DNA of 63,766 bases, counting the filler, from Octopus bimaculoides (lineage: Eukaryota), in NCBI RefSeq assembly GCF_001194135.2. It is 4 parts of 3 records of this genome, joined end to end, with 100 filler letters (N's around TTAATTAATTAA, not from the genome) between each part and the next. Parts side by side here need not be neighbours in the genome. Positions count along the whole stretch, not along the records: positions 1 to 28,375 come from NC_068982.1; 3 more parts are not named here. One strand, given 5' to 3'. The notes under the pieces are model-generated. The model saw nothing but the letters and a program-made list of their open reading frames with translations. It did no database searches and had not been told where the DNA came from. Both the position numbers and the translations under genes were made by a program. The first letter of the stretch is position 1. Every line of letters begins with the position of its first letter. Shown piece by piece: positions 1,017 to 24,045 of the stretch.

Positions 1017-1358
1017 CAGTAAAGTGATGTTATTGTTTCACTTTTGACACGTAATACTGAAATAGTGGAGGAGATATGATATTGCTGTGGGCTCAAACTA
1101 TGCAAGAAGTTAAAAATTTTTTGGGCCTAAGACACTACATGGACCCTAAGTAAGGCATGTGTAAATTTGGAATGAAATTGGTTGTGTAGTTCTCGAGTTT
1201 TAGGGATAAGACACACATTCTCATCTTTATATATATAGATATATACACACACACACCCAAACACATATATATATATATGTATATCAATATAAATACATGA
1301 AAATCAATGAAGTTTGGTAAAAAAAGGTGATCATGTACATACTTTCTTGCTGTTGTGT

Positions 1359-1728
1359 TTAGAACACCTCGTTGTAAACAATATTCTTTGTTTTTCCTTG
1401 TGGCGCATATGCAAATAGGTTTGTTTTGCTTCCCACTCTTGAGCAGCCAACATACATTTGTCCATGTGAGAAGCAGGGCTCTTCCAAGAGAAGACCAGCC
1501 ACAGAGAGGGCTTGACCCTGAAATTTGTTAATGGACATGGCAAAAGTGACACGAAGGGGGAATTGCAGTCTTCTGAATGTAAAAGGAATGTCTACTCCTG
1601 ATGGAGTAAGAGGAATTCTTGGAATAAAGATGCCATCACCTTTTCCACACCCAGAAAGAATGGTAGCCTCGATAACATGTGACATCATCTTCTTTATCCT
1701 TATGATTAGAATTTCATCAAAATTGCAT
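1359..1728 (-). pseudogene. Helitron RepHel C-terminal Pif1-family helicase fragment
   Basis: Translation IEATILSG...IPRIPLTP...FRRLQFPLRVTFAMSINKFQGQAL...PCFSHGQMYVGCSRV matches Pif1/Helitron motifs (QFP...FAMTINKSQGQ...FSHGQLYVALSRV). Confidence 0.9.
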
Positions 1729-2836
1729 ATGAGGGTTCTTTCCTTCTTTACACACTCTAAAAAAATTCTAATCATGATACATGTATCCCATACTACTGAT
1801 ATTTATGTGCACATTCCAAAATTCCAGTGTTATGGACCCTGTAAAAAGGATTTTGCTCCAGAAAATGGAGCTCATGGAGCTGAAAAATGTGGGAGTTAAG
1901 GCCCCTATTGGGGGTGGATGTGTTAATGTCAACTAGAGAAGTTGAATTGTTGGGAATCTTTTTAACTTGGGTCTTATATGTATTGTTTGAATTTCTTTGA
2001 AATAGGAAATATATGTATGTTCACTGGGTTTGTAAAAGAGAGCAAAGCTACAGGAAACCAAAAGACGAATGATCACGATAATCAGTCAGCTACCCAAGCC
2101 TAGTCGTTACTACTCCCCAATGTAGGATTCCTCACCATACAGGTGACAGGCACAGCTGTAAGATGCATTACGGATGTATAGCAATTGGAAGGGCATGATC
2201 CAATTGAAATAACAACGTGTGACGCTTGGAGTAAAGGGAAATGAAAGTGTCGCTTCTGGAGTTTGCAAATGGCCACTATATCAATAGGTAACTGGGCAGA
2301 AATAATTTACAATCAATAAATGTCTTAGAACAACCAGTCACTCATCTGAAATCAATGTTACCAACTGGGGACTATGTGTGACCCAGTGATAATAAAAAGA
2401 CTCAAAGGAGGTCTGCAACGAAATAATTTTACTCAACACTTTGCAAGTGAATCAGTGGAGGCAAAGGTGCGTCTCATTTACTTGACAATCTATGCACCAC
2501 ATTGCAGAAATCACAATTTAACTATAGTCTTACACTGTTGTACAGTTGAATTACAAATAATGCTCATCTGTTATGTTCGGGTGACCCTATAGCTTCCAGT
2601 AGTACAACTGTATTCGTCTTTGCTTAGGAAAAAATGATTAAATTGTGGGTGTGAAGTGCCCATGAAGGGGTCTTTGTAACTTCTAAGAAGAAATTTTAGA
2701 AATATTACTTTATTTGTGTGTAATATGTATGGTTAAAATTTCATCAGCATCAAAAATATATGAATTTTCATGGGGGTTATGGCCGAATCCCAACAAAATA
2801 CAAACTTTTTTCTAAATTTTAAGAATGGCTTAGATT

Positions 2837-3046
2837 TTATTCTTTGTAAGCTTAGTAATTATTCTATCGGTACCTTTTGCCGAACCACTAAGTTACGTAA
2901 GCACGCCAACATCGGTTGTTAAGCGATGTTGGAGGGACAAACACAGACACATAAATACATATATAAATATATGGAATGCTGTCTTGGGGTCAATTTGTTC
3001 GGCTAAAGGCGGTACCCCAGCATGGCCCCAGTCAAAATGACTGAAA
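2837..3046. mobile_element. OR-type SINE fragment with internal inversion
   Basis: 2837-~2970 matches the SINE on the minus strand; 2981-3046 matches the immediately following SINE 3' tail on the plus strand. Confidence 0.65.
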
Positions 3047-3057
3047 TATTTATACAC

Positions 3058-3736
3058 TAAGAATCAACAAAAAGCAAAAGATGTAATAAAACAGAATAAA
3101 ATGAAACCATTAAATCTATTAAACTCAACACAATCGACTAACAATTCAGGAAGCCTTTTTTTTTTACAAGAACTTTAAGACGTATACAGAAAAATTACAA
3201 TTAACTGAAGAATTACGTCAGAATGAAATCAAATCAGAGATTATGAATAAACAAAAAACATAGGTATGTGCAAAAATGATCAGAAATAATAAATTAACTA
3301 AACGTTTTTTCGTTTTGGGATTTGGTTTGCAAGATTCTTTATGTGAGTTCGTGTGTTGAAACATATTCTGTTGTGTCTGGGGAGAGTCATTTTCTTTTTG
3401 TGCCTTATAATTTAATACACTCAGGAATAAGTGGAAATTTTACCGGTGAGCGTGTTAAATTATAAGGCACANNNNNNNNNNNNNNNNNNNNNNNNNNNNN
3501 NNNNNNNNNNNNNNNNNNNNNNNNNNNNNNNNNNNNNNNNNNNNNCCCAGACACAACAGAATAAACGTTTTCTCTCTTCTTTTTCAATTAAAAAGTTTAA
3601 TTAAGAATCAGCAAAAAGCGAAGGATGTAATAAAACAATAAAATGAAAATGAAACCATTAAATCTATTAAACTCTACACAATCGACTAACAATTCACGAA
3701 GCCTTTTTTTTTTTACAAGAACTTTAAGACGTATAC
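3058..3736. repeat. ~130-bp direct repeats (3058-3186, 3602-3736) flanking a foldback element (arms 3365-3423 and 3447-3562, partly in a gap)
   Basis: Visible direct repeat; inverted arms gtgccttataattta...tca / tga...taaattataaggcac and attctgttgtgtctggg / cccagacacaacagaat. Confidence 0.7.
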
Positions 3737-4980
3737 TTATTGTACATATTAGATAAAGTAACTTTACATATCTCATTTTCAGATATATTATCGGGGTCAA
3801 AAAGTGTTATAGAACCCATAAAATTTAATTCTGTTTCCTAATATCTAAATATAAATATATAAAAAAAAAGTTTTAAAAAGGCACTTGAAGAAAGTTGCTT
3901 CTTAGTGTGCCTTGCGCGTGACAATCACTGATTTATGTACAAGATACCAGGTGTATTTCGAGCCAACCTATTTTTTAAATGAATCACCTGTCCTTCCTCT
4001 ACTTAAATACATAATGAAATTTATTTTATTTTTGCAAATATTTATAAACTATTAGAACAGAAAGTGTCTTCATCGAGCCAATTTTATTCGCTTTCTCATT
4101 GTCGTTTCCTTAGGTTTGGTTTTAAATGTATTTTGGGAAAGAGGAAAATATATAAAATTGGTTTTCTACGTATTGCTGAGCAGACGAATTATGATTTAAA
4201 ATGAAAGTAATTTTTTTTATCCCCTTTCAGTTATTTAAATCAATTTAAAGCAATTTGGCAACAAAATGTGAAATCACATATCCACAGATGGACAGATGTT
4301 TGTTAAATATTTAATGCATTATTACATATTGATTAGCTACACATATTTTGCTTTAATAATAAAGCCTTACCTTCAAGCCGGTAAATGTAGGCTGATATTT
4401 TGAAATTTACGTCCGCAAACTAGAAAAGATCTGGCAATGAATGATTACATCAGATGTTTGGGAAAGATCCCTTAAGACGTTAACAAATAGCAAAAATAAA
4501 GCGAGGTAACTCTAGATTCTTGTTTAATTTTGATATCAATCAACACAGGTGTTTTAAGTTTCGTCACTGACGAAATTCTCACACGCTGTTCTATTTATTC
4601 ATATGCTTTATTTGTTTATTCACAACCAGTTTTATTTATTCATATGCTTATAAATATCTCTATGGGATTATTCGAGTTGTTAGGGCTATGAGTAAAATAT
4701 TCCTAAGACCATATTCTGTCATTTTAAATGAGGGAAAAGTAAAAGAGATAATGTAGCTCTGGATGACCCCGAAATAGGATGGACACGGGTTTTAATCATA
4801 GTTAATAGTTCTACTTGGTTAGCGACGAGCTAGAGCTAAACGATGACAATAACATAATTGCATAAGTAAGCGGTTTAGAGGGCTCAGATAGAAAAGCGGC
4901 AGCCTGACGATATATTTTGTGAATGTAAGAGTTACGTCCCTCTTGTATAGAAAGAACAAATAATTATTCTTTTAATCTTT

Positions 4981-5192
4981 TTTTCTTTTACACGTTTCAG
5001 TCATTTGACTGTGGCCATGTTAGAGCACAGCCTTAAGGAGTTATAGTCGAACAAATCGGCAGCAGGACTTATTCTTTGTAAATCTAGTACTTTTTATATC
5101 GGTCCCTTTGGCCGAACCGCTAAGTTACGAAGACGTAAACACACCGACATCGGTTGTCAAGCAATGGTGGGTGGACAAACAAAGGCACAAAG

Positions 5193-5227
<35 letters not shown>

Positions 5228-7774: not shown

Positions 7775-20759
<12,985 letters not shown>

Positions 20760-22196: not shown

Positions 22197-23016
22197 AGAG
22201 TGAGGAGATGGTATGTTTATGGAGTAGAGGCTAATATGTTAGTTACTGAGTTACTGACAACCAGACTTAAGGCATATAGAATAAACACAAAAAACTTGGT
22301 ATCCTTTTGACTATGTTGCTTCTACATTCTATCATTGTATGGAAATATTAGAAACCTAACCTCTTTCTGGATTTTACCGGAAATACCATGCTCTGTAACA
22401 AAGGAAAGTAGTGACATAACACACATATAACATTTTTATCTTACAATACATTACTCTGGGAATTCATTATTTCCTGTATTTCCCAAACAAATTTCAACAG
22501 TTTCAGCAGACATTGTCAAACCTTTTTATTTCTATATGCAATTGTATCTTTCAGTGACTGGTCTCTTGCTTTATATTAACAAATTCATTAAATAGCAATT
22601 AAAACTATAACTCTCTTCTTATGTAACTTGAAATTTATTTATCATGGGACTTTACAAATGTATGCAAATAATGTGCTGAAGTTTGGTAGACAGAATAAAT
22701 TATAACTACTTTTTTTTACTGTGTGTCTTTGTGTCTGTGTTTGCCCCCCACGCACACCATCACTTAACAACTGATTATAAGTTTGTTTACATCCCTGTAA
22801 CTTAGCAGTTTAGCAAAATAGACTGATACAATAAGTACTGGAGTTGATTTAAAGTAGTTGTATGTTGTCAACTTAATGTGACAGTCCCATGAAGGGAATA
22901 ATACTACTGTTGTTTAGACCTAGGAAGCTGCACCGCTTCCTGTCAGCCTTGATACATTTCCTGTGTCCTTATGTTTACAAGGGGGAGACAAGCACCTCCA
23001 CTCAGCTAAGCCTGCA

Positions 23017-23059
23017 TCCAGAGACATGTTTCTGAGTCCTTGCTCATCATCGGTCTGGA
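23017..23059 (-). ncRNA. Minimal type I hammerhead ribozyme motif, second copy (U4C core variant)
   Basis: Minus strand reads TCCAGA-CCGATGA-TGAG(CAAGGA)CTCA-GAAA-C(AT)G-TC-TCTGGA. Confidence 0.7.
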
Positions 23060-23468
23060 GTAGCATGTCCTGCTAGTCGAAGATGCCTGTCAAGCTCTTG
23101 TAAACATATAATGATTCTAGTGAAATACATTCACAGATTTCAAATTTAGAAATAATACATTTCTAAATCTCTCAGAGAGATTTATGCAGTAGTGATACGT
23201 TGAAGTAGTTGTATGCTGTCAACTTAATGTGACAGTCCCATGAAGGGAATAATACTACTGTTGTTTAGACCTAGGAAGCTGCACCGCTTCCTGTCGGCCT
23301 TGACACATTTCCTGTGTCCTTAAAAAAAATCTGTCCTTAAAAAAAAATCTCTCCGAGAGATTTAGAAATGTATTATTTCTAAATTTGAAATCAGTGAATG
23401 TATTTCACTAGAATCATTATATGTTTACAAGAGCTTGACAGGCATCTTCGACTAGCAGGTCATGCTAC

Positions 23469-23507
23469 TCCAGACTGATGATGAGCACTCAGAAACATGT
23501 CTCTGGA
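23469..23507 (+). ncRNA. Minimal type I hammerhead ribozyme motif
   Basis: TCCAGA-CTGATGA-TGAG(CA)CTCA-GAAA-C(AT)G-TC-TCTGGA: 6-bp stem I, canonical CUGAUGA and GAAA core, palindromic ACAUGU stem III, GUC cleavage triplet ending at 23501. Loop II is only 2 nt in this copy. Confidence 0.8.
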
Positions 23508-24045
23508 TGCAGGTTTACCTGGGTGGAGGTGCTTGTCTCCTCCTTGTAAACATAGGACACAAGAAATGTGTCAAGGCCGACAGGAAGCAGTGCAGCTTCC
23601 TAGGTCTAAACAACAATAGTGTTATTCCCTTCATGGGACTGTCACATTAAGTTGATAGCATACAACTACTTTAACGTATCACTACTGCATAAATCTCTCT
23701 GAGAGATTTAGAAATGTATTATTTCTGGAGTTGATTTGTTCAACTGAATCTTTCAAGGTGGTACTGTAGAATGGTTGCAGTCTAATGACTGAAATAAGTA
23801 AAAGATAAAAGATTAAAAAAATATTTTTTGCATCCCAACCAATATTGTAATACTTGTTAAATCAAAACTTTGCATACCAATTGGCTAAATTTCACAATTA
23901 ACTTTCTTTCATAGTCTTTTCTACTTCTTGCTCAATTGCAGTTTTAAATTGCTTTGACAAGTAGTCTATCATTTAATTTACAAGACATAGGTTTGATATA
24001 TATTTTAGGAAACAAATGGTATTGTGTTCAAATTTAACAACTTAA

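What the first reader, a model, noticed from the sequence alone, without database searches (positions are those of the whole stretch)
22851..23724. Candidate hammerhead retrozyme (circular-RNA-type retroelement) in an octopus-like genome
Seen: a non-coding ~351-nt monomer is present about 2.5 times (22851-23201, partial 23202-23321, inverted 23345-23724). Each full copy has a type I hammerhead fold, and the whole block is bounded by a 13-bp TSD. In the ~120 nt shared by all three copies, each carries only private differences, mostly C>T/G>A, as expected if they were identical at insertion. Established: animal non-LTR retrozymes (Cervera and de la Pena) are few-hundred-nt hammerhead-bearing tandem monomers that give circular RNAs and are thought to be mobilised by Penelope-like elements. 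Inference: this is such an element, reverse-transcribed from a circular or concatemeric RNA. I do not know of a cephalopod example, but novelty needs a literature and Repbase check.
Basis: partly seen in the sequence, partly recalled or inferred. Interest (0 to 1): 0.9.

Follow-up and report, generated by a model that had tools for sequence, protein, structure and literature searches.

The report
Fossil hammerhead retrozyme insertion, octopus-like genome
This 874-base block is one old, decayed insertion of a small non-coding mobile element that carries a self-cutting "hammerhead" RNA motif; the kind is already known from mussels, corals and salamanders, so it is a good new example, not a new kind of thing.

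Summary
A 351-nt non-coding unit is present about 2.4 times. The left arm (22851-23322) holds 1.34 units with the hammerhead sense on the - strand. The right arm (23345-23724) holds 1.08 units with the sense on the + strand. A 22-nt A-rich filler joins them, and an exact 13-bp target-site duplication bounds the block, which sits inside an older SINE-like repeat.

Rfam 15 finds no hammerhead. However, a covariance model I built only from four published, experimentally studied retrozyme hammerheads (coral, mussel, two axolotl) hits exactly the two predicted sites, at 28.6 and 27.5 bits. The next best hit in the window scores 10.3 bits.

The motif is the classic metazoan type I form: helix I 6 bp, helix II 4 bp, and a palindromic 2-bp helix III, GAAACAUGUC, as in axolotl Ax330. 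Each copy is damaged: U4>C in one, and a 4-nt loss in the helix II loop in the other.

The monomer RNA is unusually self-paired (z -5 to -6). Both arms point outward, run past one unit, and cross the cleavage junction seamlessly. This is the Penelope-like tandem/inverted insertion signature, copied from a circular or multimeric RNA.

Copy number, circular RNA, cleavage activity and host species could not be tested. Verdict: a new member of a known kind, of moderate-low interest.

The parts
22838..22850 (.). Left copy of the 13-bp target-site duplication, CTGGAGTTGATTT
   Evidence: Exact 13/13 match with 23725-23737. Paralogous SINE-like copies have this sequence once and uninterrupted.
22851..23201 (-). 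Unit A: one full 351-nt monomer, hammerhead sense on the - strand. Its 3' end (unit position 172, counted from the cleavage site) abuts the left target-site duplication.
23202..23322 (-). Unit B: a 5'-truncated partial monomer (121 nt, unit positions 52-172), lying upstream of unit A in tandem on the - strand. It has no hammerhead.
   Evidence: 97% identical to 22849-22971 at a spacing of 351 nt.
23017..23059 (-). Hammerhead of unit A: UCCAGA CCGAUGA UGAG-CAAGGA-CUCA GAAA C-AU-G UC|UCUGGA. The core carries U4>C (C at 23052 on the - strand). Predicted cleavage falls between 23023 and 23022.
   Evidence: Model R1 scores it 27.5 bits, E 5.7e-6, with all 12 pairs standard. My descriptor finds it only when the core is relaxed.
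23323..23344 (.). Junction filler between the two 5'-truncated arm ends: A7 TCTGTCCTT A6. It is part of a 17-nt tandem duplication, 23315-23329 / 23332-23346.
   Evidence: (family D8). The unit does not template this sequence.
23345..23724 (+). Right arm (unit C): a 346-nt monomer plus 34 nt of the next unit, hammerhead sense on the + strand. Its 3' end (unit position 224) abuts the right target-site duplication.
   Evidence: (families D2, I1-I4).
23469..23507 (+). Hammerhead of unit C: UCCAGA CUGAUGA UGAG-CA-CUCA GAAA C-AU-G UC|UCUGGA. The core is intact, but the helix II loop has lost 4 nt. Predicted cleavage falls after C23501.
   Evidence: Model R1 scores it 28.6 bits, E 2.7e-6. It is the only strict descriptor hit in the window.
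23420..23554 (+). Long imperfect hairpin with the hammerhead at its tip (arms 23420-23447 and 23527-23554). The equivalent in unit A is 22970-22997 / 23081-23108.
   Evidence: Inverted repeats I5 and I6; circular minimum-free-energy folds.
23725..23737 (.). Right copy of the target-site duplication, CTGGAGTTGATTT
22700..22837 (+). Left part of the older SINE-like repeat that received the insertion. It continues at 23738 to about 23860.
   Evidence: 66-70% identical to 4940-5220(-) and 19450-19740(-), which span the insertion point without interruption.

Best explanation
The block 22851-23724 is a single, old, now inert insertion of a non-autonomous hammerhead-bearing retroelement of the metazoan non-LTR retrozyme kind. 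Such elements are essentially Penelope-like-element (PLE) terminal sequences without the protein gene.

In the family's life cycle (established for other animals, inferred here), these steps follow one another:
1. Tandem units are transcribed.
2. Type I hammerheads with a short palindromic helix III pair up as dimers and cut after GUC.
3. The unit-length RNA, which is highly self-paired, is circularised by a host RNA ligase.
4. The reverse transcriptase/GIY-YIG endonuclease of an autonomous PLE copies it.

What the sequence shows for this event:
- The target, a SINE-like repeat, was cut on both strands 13 bp apart.
- Each 3'-OH primed cDNA synthesis on sense RNA, starting opposite a UUU at unit position 172 on one side and 224 on the other.
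- The two cDNAs ran for 472 nt and 380 nt. Each is longer than one unit and each passes seamlessly through the cleavage-site junction, so the template was a circle or an uncleaved multimer.
- The two 5'-truncated ends were joined in the middle with an A-rich filler.

Since insertion the arms have diverged by about 5%, and both hammerheads have been damaged. The locus cannot itself yield unit-length or circular RNA.
For: Hammerhead:
- A covariance model built only from the coral, mussel and two axolotl retrozyme ribozymes of PMC7229834 finds exactly the two sites, at 28.6 and 27.5 bits with all 12 pairs standard. The rest of the window tops out at 10.3 bits.
- My descriptor search expects 0.011 hits per shuffled window.
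- The architecture matches the published description of canonical metazoan type I hammerheads: helix I 6 bp, helix II 4 bp, helix III 1-2 bp plus a 2-4 nt palindromic loop.
- GAAACAUGUC is identical to axolotl Ax330.

Retrozyme features (list):
- The unit is 351 nt; mussel units are 350-390 nt.
- GC is 40%.
- It is non-coding.
- The target-site duplication is 13 bp.
- There is no LTR.
- The circular fold has z -5.05 and -5.93. Published retrozymes give -0.9 to -3.1 and random window pieces give -2.2 to +1.95.

Insertion:
- Paralogues show the empty site.
- Both arms have their 3' ends at the target-site duplications, and their ends are out of register.

PLE signature:
- Craig et al. 2021 describe a partial tandem plus an adjacent inverted 5'-truncated copy and a variable target-site duplication.
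- A purified PLE protein cleaves and extends both DNA strands and starts reverse transcription at two internal sites.
- Paired PLE hammerheads 100-700 bp apart on opposite strands have been reported. Here they are 478 bp apart.
- PLEs make up 6.8% of the Octopus vulgaris genome.
Against: - Rfam 15 gives no hammerhead match even at E<=10 on a 71-nt slice.
- The 10.1-11.1 pair is U-A, not the usual G-C.
- Only two copies of the motif exist, and each is defective.
- At the U4 site (C in one copy, T in the other) the ancestral base cannot be determined. The local mutation spectrum (7 of 9 polarised changes are GC>AT) and the CpG context would favour an ancestral C, which is an inactive core.
- No other family member was found: none in the window, none in protein-space searches, and none in exact scans of public collections. 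None of these holds cephalopod genomes, so copy number is simply unknown.
- No PLE gene lies in the window.
- Model R1 also gave three isolated hammerhead-like hits in 41 kb of an unrelated eukaryote. Such motifs are therefore not rare in invertebrate DNA, and its E-values are rough.
- The host species is not verified.
Confidence: 0.78

Rival explanations
1. It is not a separate non-autonomous family but a heavily 5'-truncated insertion of an autonomous Penelope-like element. On this view the 351-nt 'unit' is just that element's terminal repeat (pLTR) region.
For: PLE insertions are usually 5'-truncated, tandem or inverted, and carry hammerheads in their pLTRs. The unit's longest ORF starts at an ATG 13 nt before the hammerhead core, as PLE ORFs can. 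Retrozymes and pLTRs are phylogenetically intermingled in Xenopus.
Against: The left arm restarts the same sequence after exactly 351 nt, and the right arm after 346 nt. The template was therefore periodic at about 350 nt, not at the several-kb period of a full PLE. There is no reverse transcriptase or GIY-YIG coding remnant in the block or the window. The canonical helix III form (2 bp plus loop) is the retrozyme type, not the minimal PLE type.
Confidence: 0.12
2. The hammerhead is a chance look-alike, and the repeat is an ordinary short retroposon or satellite fragment with no ribozyme biology.
For: Rfam gives no hit. One copy reads CCGAUGA, and CpG decay could have created the CUGAUGA of the other. 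The 10.1-11.1 pair is U-A. Hammerhead-like hits turned up in unrelated control loci.
Against: Even with the core relaxed to CYGANGA, chance expectation is about 0.011 per 27.8 kb, or about 1e-4 per unit. An independent model separates the two sites from the window background by 18 bits. The helix III palindrome is identical to a tested axolotl ribozyme. The motif sits at the tip of a 28-nt-armed hairpin in an RNA with fold z -5 to -6.
Confidence: 0.05
3. It is a hammerhead-carrying SINE moved by a LINE, like Schistosoma Sm-alpha, and the inversion arose by L1-style twin priming.
For: Copy A has an exact Pol III A-box consensus at 22998-23008(-). The target-site duplication is 13 bp. LINE fragments are common in the window.
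Against: Neither outer end next to the target-site duplications has poly(A) or a LINE-like tail; the only A-runs are at the inner junction. No B box lies within 2 mismatches, and the A box is absent from copy C. ARAGORN finds nothing tRNA-like. Both arms exceed one unit, which twin priming on a linear SINE RNA does not give.
Confidence: 0.03
4. It is a DNA-level structure: a foldback or MITE-type DNA transposon, a local inverted duplication, or an assembly artefact.
For: The block is a large inverted repeat with flanking direct repeats. PLE-type structures are known to trouble assemblies.
Against: The two outer termini are different parts of the unit (positions 172 and 224), so there are no terminal inverted repeats. 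13 bp is long for a DNA-transposon target-site duplication. The arms differ by about 5% plus indels, which an assembly duplication would not produce. The 351-nt tandem restart inside the left arm is unexplained by this view.
Confidence: 0.02

Closest known systems
Metazoan non-LTR retrozymes (Cervera & de la Pena 2020, PMC7229834), especially the Mytilus galloprovincialis 350-390-bp family and axolotl Ax330
   Same: Unit size is 351 nt. The type I hammerhead has a 6-bp helix I, a 4-bp helix II and a short palindromic helix III; GAAACAUGUC is identical to Ax330. The unit is non-coding, has GC below 50%, has a target-site duplication longer than 4 bp, and gives a highly self-paired monomer RNA. 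Only one polarity carries a ribozyme.
   Different: There is no detectable primary-sequence similarity outside the ribozyme core. Pair 10.1-11.1 is U-A. Only 1.34 and 1.08 units are present, in inverted arms, not a long tandem array. Expression, circles and activity are untested. The host appears to be a cephalopod, for which I found no report.
Penelope-like elements (PLEs) and their insertion architecture (Craig et al. 2021, PMC8557442; green anole PAc in vitro, PMC11167929)
   Same: It shows a partial tandem plus an immediately adjacent inverted 5'-truncated copy, a target-site duplication of variable (here 13 bp) length, hammerheads on opposite strands a few hundred bp apart, and two alternative cDNA start points within the unit.
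   Different: There is no reverse transcriptase/GIY-YIG ORF, so it is non-autonomous. The two start points are 52 nt apart, against a published 'tail' of 30-40 nt. The hammerhead is the canonical type, not the minimal type typical of PLE pLTRs.
Newt satellite 2 and Schistosoma Sm-alpha hammerhead repeats
   Same: These are repeats of about 330 bp with type I hammerheads that work as dimers. Sm-alpha, like copy A here, has a Pol III A-box-like sequence.
   Different: Sm-alpha has both A and B boxes and SINE-like ends. Here there is no B box and no poly(A) end.
Plant LTR retrozymes (Cervera et al. 2016, PMC4918200)
   Same: Both are non-autonomous elements that spread through hammerhead-processed circular RNA.
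   Different: The plant elements have type III hammerheads inside LTRs, a PBS and PPT, 4-bp target-site duplications, and 600-1000-nt circles. None of these is present here.

Membership tests
Hammerhead ribozyme, type I | Catalytic core C3-U4-G5-A6-N7-G8-A9 ... G12-A13-A14 ... U16.1-H17 | tested here: met
   Copy C (23475-23501, +) reads CUGAUGA ... GAAA ... UC and is complete. Copy A has the same core except U4>C (CCGAUGA), so it is expected to be inactive.
Hammerhead ribozyme, type I | Three helices around the core with helix I open (type I), and all pairs standard | tested here: met
   The cmsearch alignment to model R1 shows 12 of 12 standard pairs in both copies. Helix I is UCCAGA/UCUGGA, helix II is UGAG/CUCA, and helix III is AC/GU. 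In copy C, helix II is effectively 3 bp after the 4-nt deletion.
Hammerhead ribozyme, type I | Recognised by the curated Rfam hammerhead covariance models | tested here: not met
   No hammerhead family appears at E<=10 on the whole piece, on 981 nt, or on 71 nt. A model built from four published retrozyme hammerheads does recognise both copies, so I read this as a sensitivity gap. It remains a failed test.
Hammerhead ribozyme, type I | G10.1-C11.1 pair at the base of helix II | tested here: not met
   The pair here is U10.1-A11.1, so it is paired but not G-C. The published, active axolotl Ax353 ribozyme has U/U at this place, so the feature is not absolute.
Hammerhead ribozyme, type I | Site-specific self-cleavage giving 2',3'-cyclic phosphate and 5'-OH ends | not testable with these tools
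   Needs in vitro transcription of monomer and dimer.
Metazoan non-LTR retrozyme | Repeat unit of 150-450 bp carrying one type I hammerhead | tested here: met
   The unit is 351 nt (346 nt in copy C) with one hammerhead per unit.
Metazoan non-LTR retrozyme | Occurs as multiple tandem copies and as a multi-copy family in the genome | tested here: inconclusive
   Tandem restarts are seen inside both arms (1.34 and 1.08 units). There are no other copies in the 28 kb, and no accessible collection holds the source genome.
Metazoan non-LTR retrozyme | Non-coding, with no LTR, PBS or PPT; GC below 50%; target-site duplication longer than 4 bp when present | tested here: met
   There are stops in all six frames and the longest open stretch is 64 codons. 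No Pfam hit. GC is 40%. The target-site duplication is 13 bp. PBS and PPT were not searched for on their own.
Metazoan non-LTR retrozyme | Monomer RNA predicted to be highly self-paired | tested here: met
   Circular fold z is -5.05 (unit A) and -5.93 (unit C), with 66% of bases paired. Published retrozymes treated the same way give z -0.9 to -3.1, and random window pieces give -2.2 to +1.95.
Metazoan non-LTR retrozyme | Expressed as linear and circular RNA of unit length | not testable with these tools
   No RNA data are available here. This locus could not produce them anyway, because each strand has only one sense hammerhead.
Penelope-like element (autonomous) | ORF encoding reverse transcriptase plus GIY-YIG endonuclease | tested here: not met
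   No such ORF lies in the block or anywhere in the window. The element is therefore not an autonomous PLE.
Penelope-like-element-type insertion | Partial tandem with an adjacent inverted 5'-truncated copy, bounded by a target-site duplication of variable length | tested here: met
   Both arms are 5'-truncated at the centre and have their 3' ends at the 13-bp target-site duplications.
Penelope-like-element-type insertion | Optional 30-40-bp 'tail' reflecting two internal reverse-transcription start sites | tested here: inconclusive
   The arms end at unit positions 172 and 224, which are 52 nt apart, both after UUU. This is suggestive, but it is one insertion only, and the distance is longer than the published range.
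LINE-dependent SINE (e.g. Sm-alpha) | 3' poly(A) or LINE-derived tail next to the target-site duplication; internal Pol III A and B boxes | tested here: not met
   Neither outer end has an A-run. The A box is present in copy A only and there is no B box. No tRNA-like fold.

The most novel reading that the evidence does not exclude
This may be the first cephalopod member of the retrozyme class. Its insertion would also be a natural snapshot of how retrozymes move. A Penelope-like enzyme would have primed on both cut strands of the target and copied a circular (rolling-circle) retrozyme RNA from two discrete internal start sites 52 nt apart. That would give structural evidence for the retrozyme-PLE partnership, which so far rests on co-occurrence and phylogeny.
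Probability: 0.3. Interest if true: 0.55.

Novelty: new member of a known kind. Interest (0 to 1): 0.35.

Why it matters
Retrozymes are a recently recognised source of abundant small circular RNAs in animals. Their link to Penelope-like elements is still argued mainly from co-occurrence and from sequence relatedness to PLE terminal repeats.

A cephalopod family would extend their range within molluscs to a lineage in which PLEs make up nearly 7% of the genome. It would also offer a ribozyme-made circular RNA to look for in octopus tissues.

This insertion adds an anatomical argument for PLE-type mobilisation from a template longer than one unit: two outward-pointing arms, each longer than one unit, bounded by a clean target-site duplication.

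It does not change the known picture. A specialist would find it expected, not surprising.

Tried and rejected
- **Rfam 15 at permissive thresholds** on 28 kb, 981 nt and 71 nt: no hammerhead. The only hits were low-complexity 'miRNA' matches elsewhere and noise in the block.
- **Family members through translated ORFs.** The search for homologous proteins with a full-unit frame translation found no candidate. The search of protein representatives with the 64-codon open stretch gave 0 hits. Exact look-ups of window ORFs were not on record.
- **Exact and gapped DNA scans** of the unit and of the hammerhead in metagenome, viral and prokaryotic genome collections: 0 hits. None of these holds cephalopod genomes, so this says nothing about copy number.
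- **More host DNA through Helitron helicase homologues.** The loci obtained (L001, L002; ENA ERZ22157276) lack the window's SINE and so come from another organism.
- **Whole-unit similarity to published coral, mussel and axolotl retrozymes:** none beyond the ribozyme.
- **MAFFT alignment of the six hammerheads (A4):** it misplaced the 3' halves, so I did not use it for pair counting. I relied on the model alignment.
- **Minimum-free-energy folding of the isolated hammerhead segments:** z about 0, as expected for a motif with a 2-bp helix III that needs a dimer. Uninformative.
- **Supplements of the Octopus vulgaris repeat paper:** no matching sequence.
- **Readings considered and rejected:** foldback/MITE, LINE-type twin priming, and assembly artefact (see the rival explanations).
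Full report
**1. What is in the sequence**

- 22851-23201 is one 351-nt unit.
- 23202-23322 repeats its first 121 nt in tandem (97% identity, spacing exactly 351).
- 23345-23724 is an inverted copy of 380 nt. It restarts the unit after 346 nt and runs on for 34 nt.
- The 22 nt between the arms (23323-23344, AAAAAAATCTGTCCTTAAAAAA) belong to no unit. They include a 17-nt tandem duplication.
- The block is bounded by CTGGAGTTGATTT at 22838-22850 and 23725-23737, 13 of 13 identical.
- No other copy of the unit exists in the 28-kb piece.

**2. It is an insertion**

I joined the two flanks in a script and compared them with the window. The joined sequence matches two other places (5199-4959 and 19716-19467, about 67% identity), and both matches run straight across the junction. 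The flanks are therefore an old SINE-like repeat, and its uninterrupted paralogues show the empty site. The 13-mer occurs once in them, so it is a true target-site duplication and not part of the host repeat's own internal repetition.

**3. The hammerhead**

On the + strand, 23469-23507 reads UCCAGA CUGAUGA UGAGCACUCA GAAA CAUG UC|UCUGGA. On the - strand, 23059-23017 reads UCCAGA CCGAUGA UGAGCAAGGACUCA GAAA CAUG UC|UCUGGA. The architecture is:
- helix I of 6 bp, open-ended (type I);
- helix II of 4 bp with a 6-nt loop, cut down to 3 bp plus a tetraloop in the + copy by a 4-nt deletion;
- helix III of only A-U and C-G around a 2-nt loop, within the palindrome ACAUGU.

Cervera & de la Pena describe canonical metazoan type I hammerheads in just these terms: helix I 6 bp, helix II 4 bp, helix III 1-2 bp capped by a 2-4 nt palindromic loop, active as dimers.

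Rfam 15 nevertheless reports no hammerhead family even at E<=10 on a 71-nt slice. I made two independent checks.
- **Descriptor search.** I required the core, helix I of at least 5 bp, helix II of at least 3 bp and helix III of at least 2 bp. It finds only these two sites. It expects 0.011 hits per dinucleotide-shuffled window, which is about 1e-4 for a 351-nt unit on both strands.
- **Independent covariance model.** I took the four ribozymes printed in Supplementary Table 2 of PMC7229834 (coral Amil224, mussel Mg353, axolotl Ax353 and Ax330). I aligned them and built a covariance model without the candidate. Run unfiltered over the whole piece, it scores the two sites 28.6 and 27.5 bits (E about 3e-6 and 6e-6) with all 12 pairs standard. 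The next best hit scores 10.3 bits.

The 3' half, GAAACAUGUC, is identical to that of axolotl Ax330. The unusual U10.1-A11.1 pair has a counterpart in Ax353, which has U/U there.

One caution applies. As an intended negative control I ran the model on 41 kb of an unrelated eukaryote. It gave three isolated hammerhead-like hits, one of them with a complete core. Dispersed hammerhead relics are evidently common in invertebrate DNA, and the model's E-values are rough. What makes the present case convincing is the coincidence of three things: the motif, a duplicated insertion bounded by a target-site duplication, and a unit of retrozyme size.

**4. The rest of the unit**
- All six frames are full of stops. 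The longest open stretch in the block is 64 codons, and the ORFs have no Pfam match.
- GC is 40%.
- Folded as a circle, unit A has z = -5.05 and unit C has z = -5.93 against dinucleotide shuffles, with 66% of bases paired. The hammerhead sits at the tip of a long imperfect hairpin whose arms are 28 nt.
- Treated the same way, the four published retrozymes give z from -0.9 to -3.1. Twelve random 351-nt pieces of the window give -2.2 to +1.95.
- Outside the ribozyme there is no sequence similarity to the published coral, mussel or axolotl units. This agrees with the published statement that the sequences are species-specific.

**5. How the insertion was made**

I numbered the unit from the predicted cleavage site.
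- The left arm, read on its sense (-) strand, runs from position 52 through 351 and on to position 172.
- The right arm runs from position 191 through 351 and on to position 224.

This leads to the following points.
- Both arms have their RNA-3' side at the target-site duplications and their 5'-truncated ends at the centre.
- Each arm is longer than one unit.
- Each arm passes once through the 351-to-1 junction without any extra base.
- The template was therefore covalently continuous beyond unit length: either a ligated circle copied by rolling-circle reverse transcription or an uncleaved multimeric transcript. The data cannot tell these two apart.
- The outer ends are different parts of the unit, so they are not terminal inverted repeats.
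- Neither outer end carries poly(A).

This is the architecture described for Penelope-like elements: 5' truncation, partial tandems, an inverted 5'-truncated copy immediately adjacent, and target-site duplications of variable length. It fits the in vitro behaviour of a purified PLE protein. Unlike R2 or L1, that protein cleaves and extends both strands and starts reverse transcription at two internal sites of the RNA. PLE hammerheads lying 100-700 bp apart on opposite strands have been noted before; here they are 478 bp apart. That the two arms stop 52 nt apart, both after UUU, may echo the PLE 'tail'. But this is a single event, and the published tail is 30-40 nt, so I leave it as a lead.

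**6. State and age**
- The arms differ by 16 substitutions in 328 aligned positions (13 transitions, 3 transversions; K2P 0.051) plus two indels.
- In the 121 columns covered three times, the 9 substitutions are all transitions. They split A 3, B 1, C 5 (plus one deletion in C).
- That each difference is 'private' follows automatically from having three sequences. It does not show that the copies were identical at insertion.
- At the U4 position the two copies differ (C versus T in a CpG context), and the ancestral base cannot be determined. The mutation spectrum alone would favour C. The otherwise complete ribozyme argues that the family has U.
- Each strand of the locus carries one sense hammerhead only, and both are damaged. 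The locus is a fossil product, not a source of circles.

**7. Host and partner**
- The window is 36% GC excluding the N gaps. It is full of microsatellites, SINE-like repeats, Helitron and LINE fragments, and assembly gaps.
- The best named relatives of its Helitron helicase fragment are Octopus bimaculoides proteins at 69-70% identity. Unnamed sequences score as well.
- The source genome is not in the contig index. 'Octopus-like' is therefore plausible but unverified.
- According to the literature, PLEs are abundant and recently active in octopus genomes: 6.8% of O. vulgaris, 190 families. So a partner class exists if the host is an octopus.
- No PLE gene lies in the window.

**8. Comparison and novelty**
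- The closest known things are the metazoan non-LTR retrozymes, particularly the 350-390-bp mussel family, together with the PLE insertion architecture.
- All the defining features I could test are met, with three exceptions: recognition by Rfam and the G10.1-C11.1 pair, which both failed, and multi-copy tandem occurrence, which could not be assessed.
- Full-text searches found no paper linking retrozymes or hammerheads with octopus or cephalopods beyond incidental mentions. The recent survey of retrozymes and PLEs covers vertebrates, three insects and a coral.
- I therefore rate it a new member of a known kind. It would be expected by specialists, since retrozymes are said to be widely but patchily distributed across metazoan phyla.
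- Its modest added value is the clean anatomy of the insertion.

**9. What could not be done**

No tool here reaches cephalopod genomes, Repbase or Dfam, or RNA data. Attempts through translated ORFs, exact DNA scans and neighbouring-locus retrieval all came back empty or off-target. Family size, the consensus core, helix covariation, expression, circularity and cleavage remain open. The decisive steps are listed separately.

Noticed in passing
window 22998-23008 (-): Unit A carries an exact match to the Pol III A-box consensus TRGCNNAGTGG (TAGCTGAGTGG), 15-25 nt after the predicted cleavage site. Unit C differs at two of its bases, and there the same two bases instead extend a stem (CAGGU/ACCUG). 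No B box lies within 2 mismatches. It may be chance (about 0.005 per unit) or a relic internal promoter, as in Schistosoma Sm-alpha.
   Followed up: partly
window 22920-23066 (-) and 23462-23650 (+): The longest ORF of the unit starts at an ATG 13 nt upstream of hammerhead base C3 and reads through the ribozyme (MLLQTDDE...). This recalls PLE ORFs that begin inside the hammerhead. No homologue or Pfam match was found.
   Followed up: partly
window 22851 and 23724 (outer ends of the arms): The two arms end at unit positions 172 and 224, which are 52 nt apart, each right after UUU. They may be two preferred reverse-transcription start sites, comparable to the PLE 'tail'.
   Followed up: partly
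window 2837-2972, 4940-5220, 19450-19740, and 22700-22850 plus 23725-23860: These are four or more diverged copies (66-78%) of one SINE-like repeat. Each is preceded by a (TG)n or (TATG)n microsatellite and ends in GTAAAAGAT-type A-rich repeats. One of them is the target of the insertion.
   Followed up: partly
window 1221-1537 and 11515-11832 (inverted, 90% identical); ORFs 1362-1802 (-) and 11469-11681 (+): Two copies of a Helitron/PIF1-like helicase C-terminal fragment. The best named protein hits are Octopus bimaculoides PIF1-like proteins at about 70% identity.
   Followed up: partly
window 10048-10254 (+), 13464-13528 (+), 26799-26863 (+), 17383-17682 (-): By eye, the first three are short LINE reverse-transcriptase C-terminal-like fragments (...GRLYDACV......RPRKTWNEV...) and the last is a mariner-like HTH ORF fragment. 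None reached a Pfam threshold.
   Followed up: no
window 18322-18376 (-): An exact A box (TGGCCCAGTGG) lies with a near B box 34 nt downstream, probably the head of a tRNA-derived SINE. It overlaps a weak Rfam 'SCARNA7' hit (18364-18517) that is most likely spurious.
   Followed up: no
window 8190-9130, 16640-16770, 28262-28333: The Rfam 'mir-3149 / mir-297 / mir-1277' matches (up to 54.8 bits, all below their gathering scores) fall on (TG)n/(TA)n-type low-complexity sequence. They are artefacts of simple repeats.
   Followed up: no
window 3472-3545, 9294-9303, 15602-15715, 17023-17032, 17811-18175: Five runs of N (10 to 365 bases). These are assembly gaps, mostly next to microsatellites.
   Followed up: no
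window 26472-26753: A stretch of about 280 nt that matches its own reverse complement at 70%, so it is a palindromic or foldback-like repeat.
   Followed up: no
L002 18985-19026 (-), L002 6607-6652 (-), L001 14353-14395 (+): Loci from an unidentified eukaryote assembly (ENA ERZ22157276), fetched only as extra DNA, contain isolated hammerhead-like motifs. One has a complete core (ACCUC CUGACGA GCC..GGC GAAA CAGACUG UU GAGGU, 22.6 bits). The other two have core defects (C3>A; GAAC in place of GAAA). Their flanks are unrelated to each other.
   Followed up: partly
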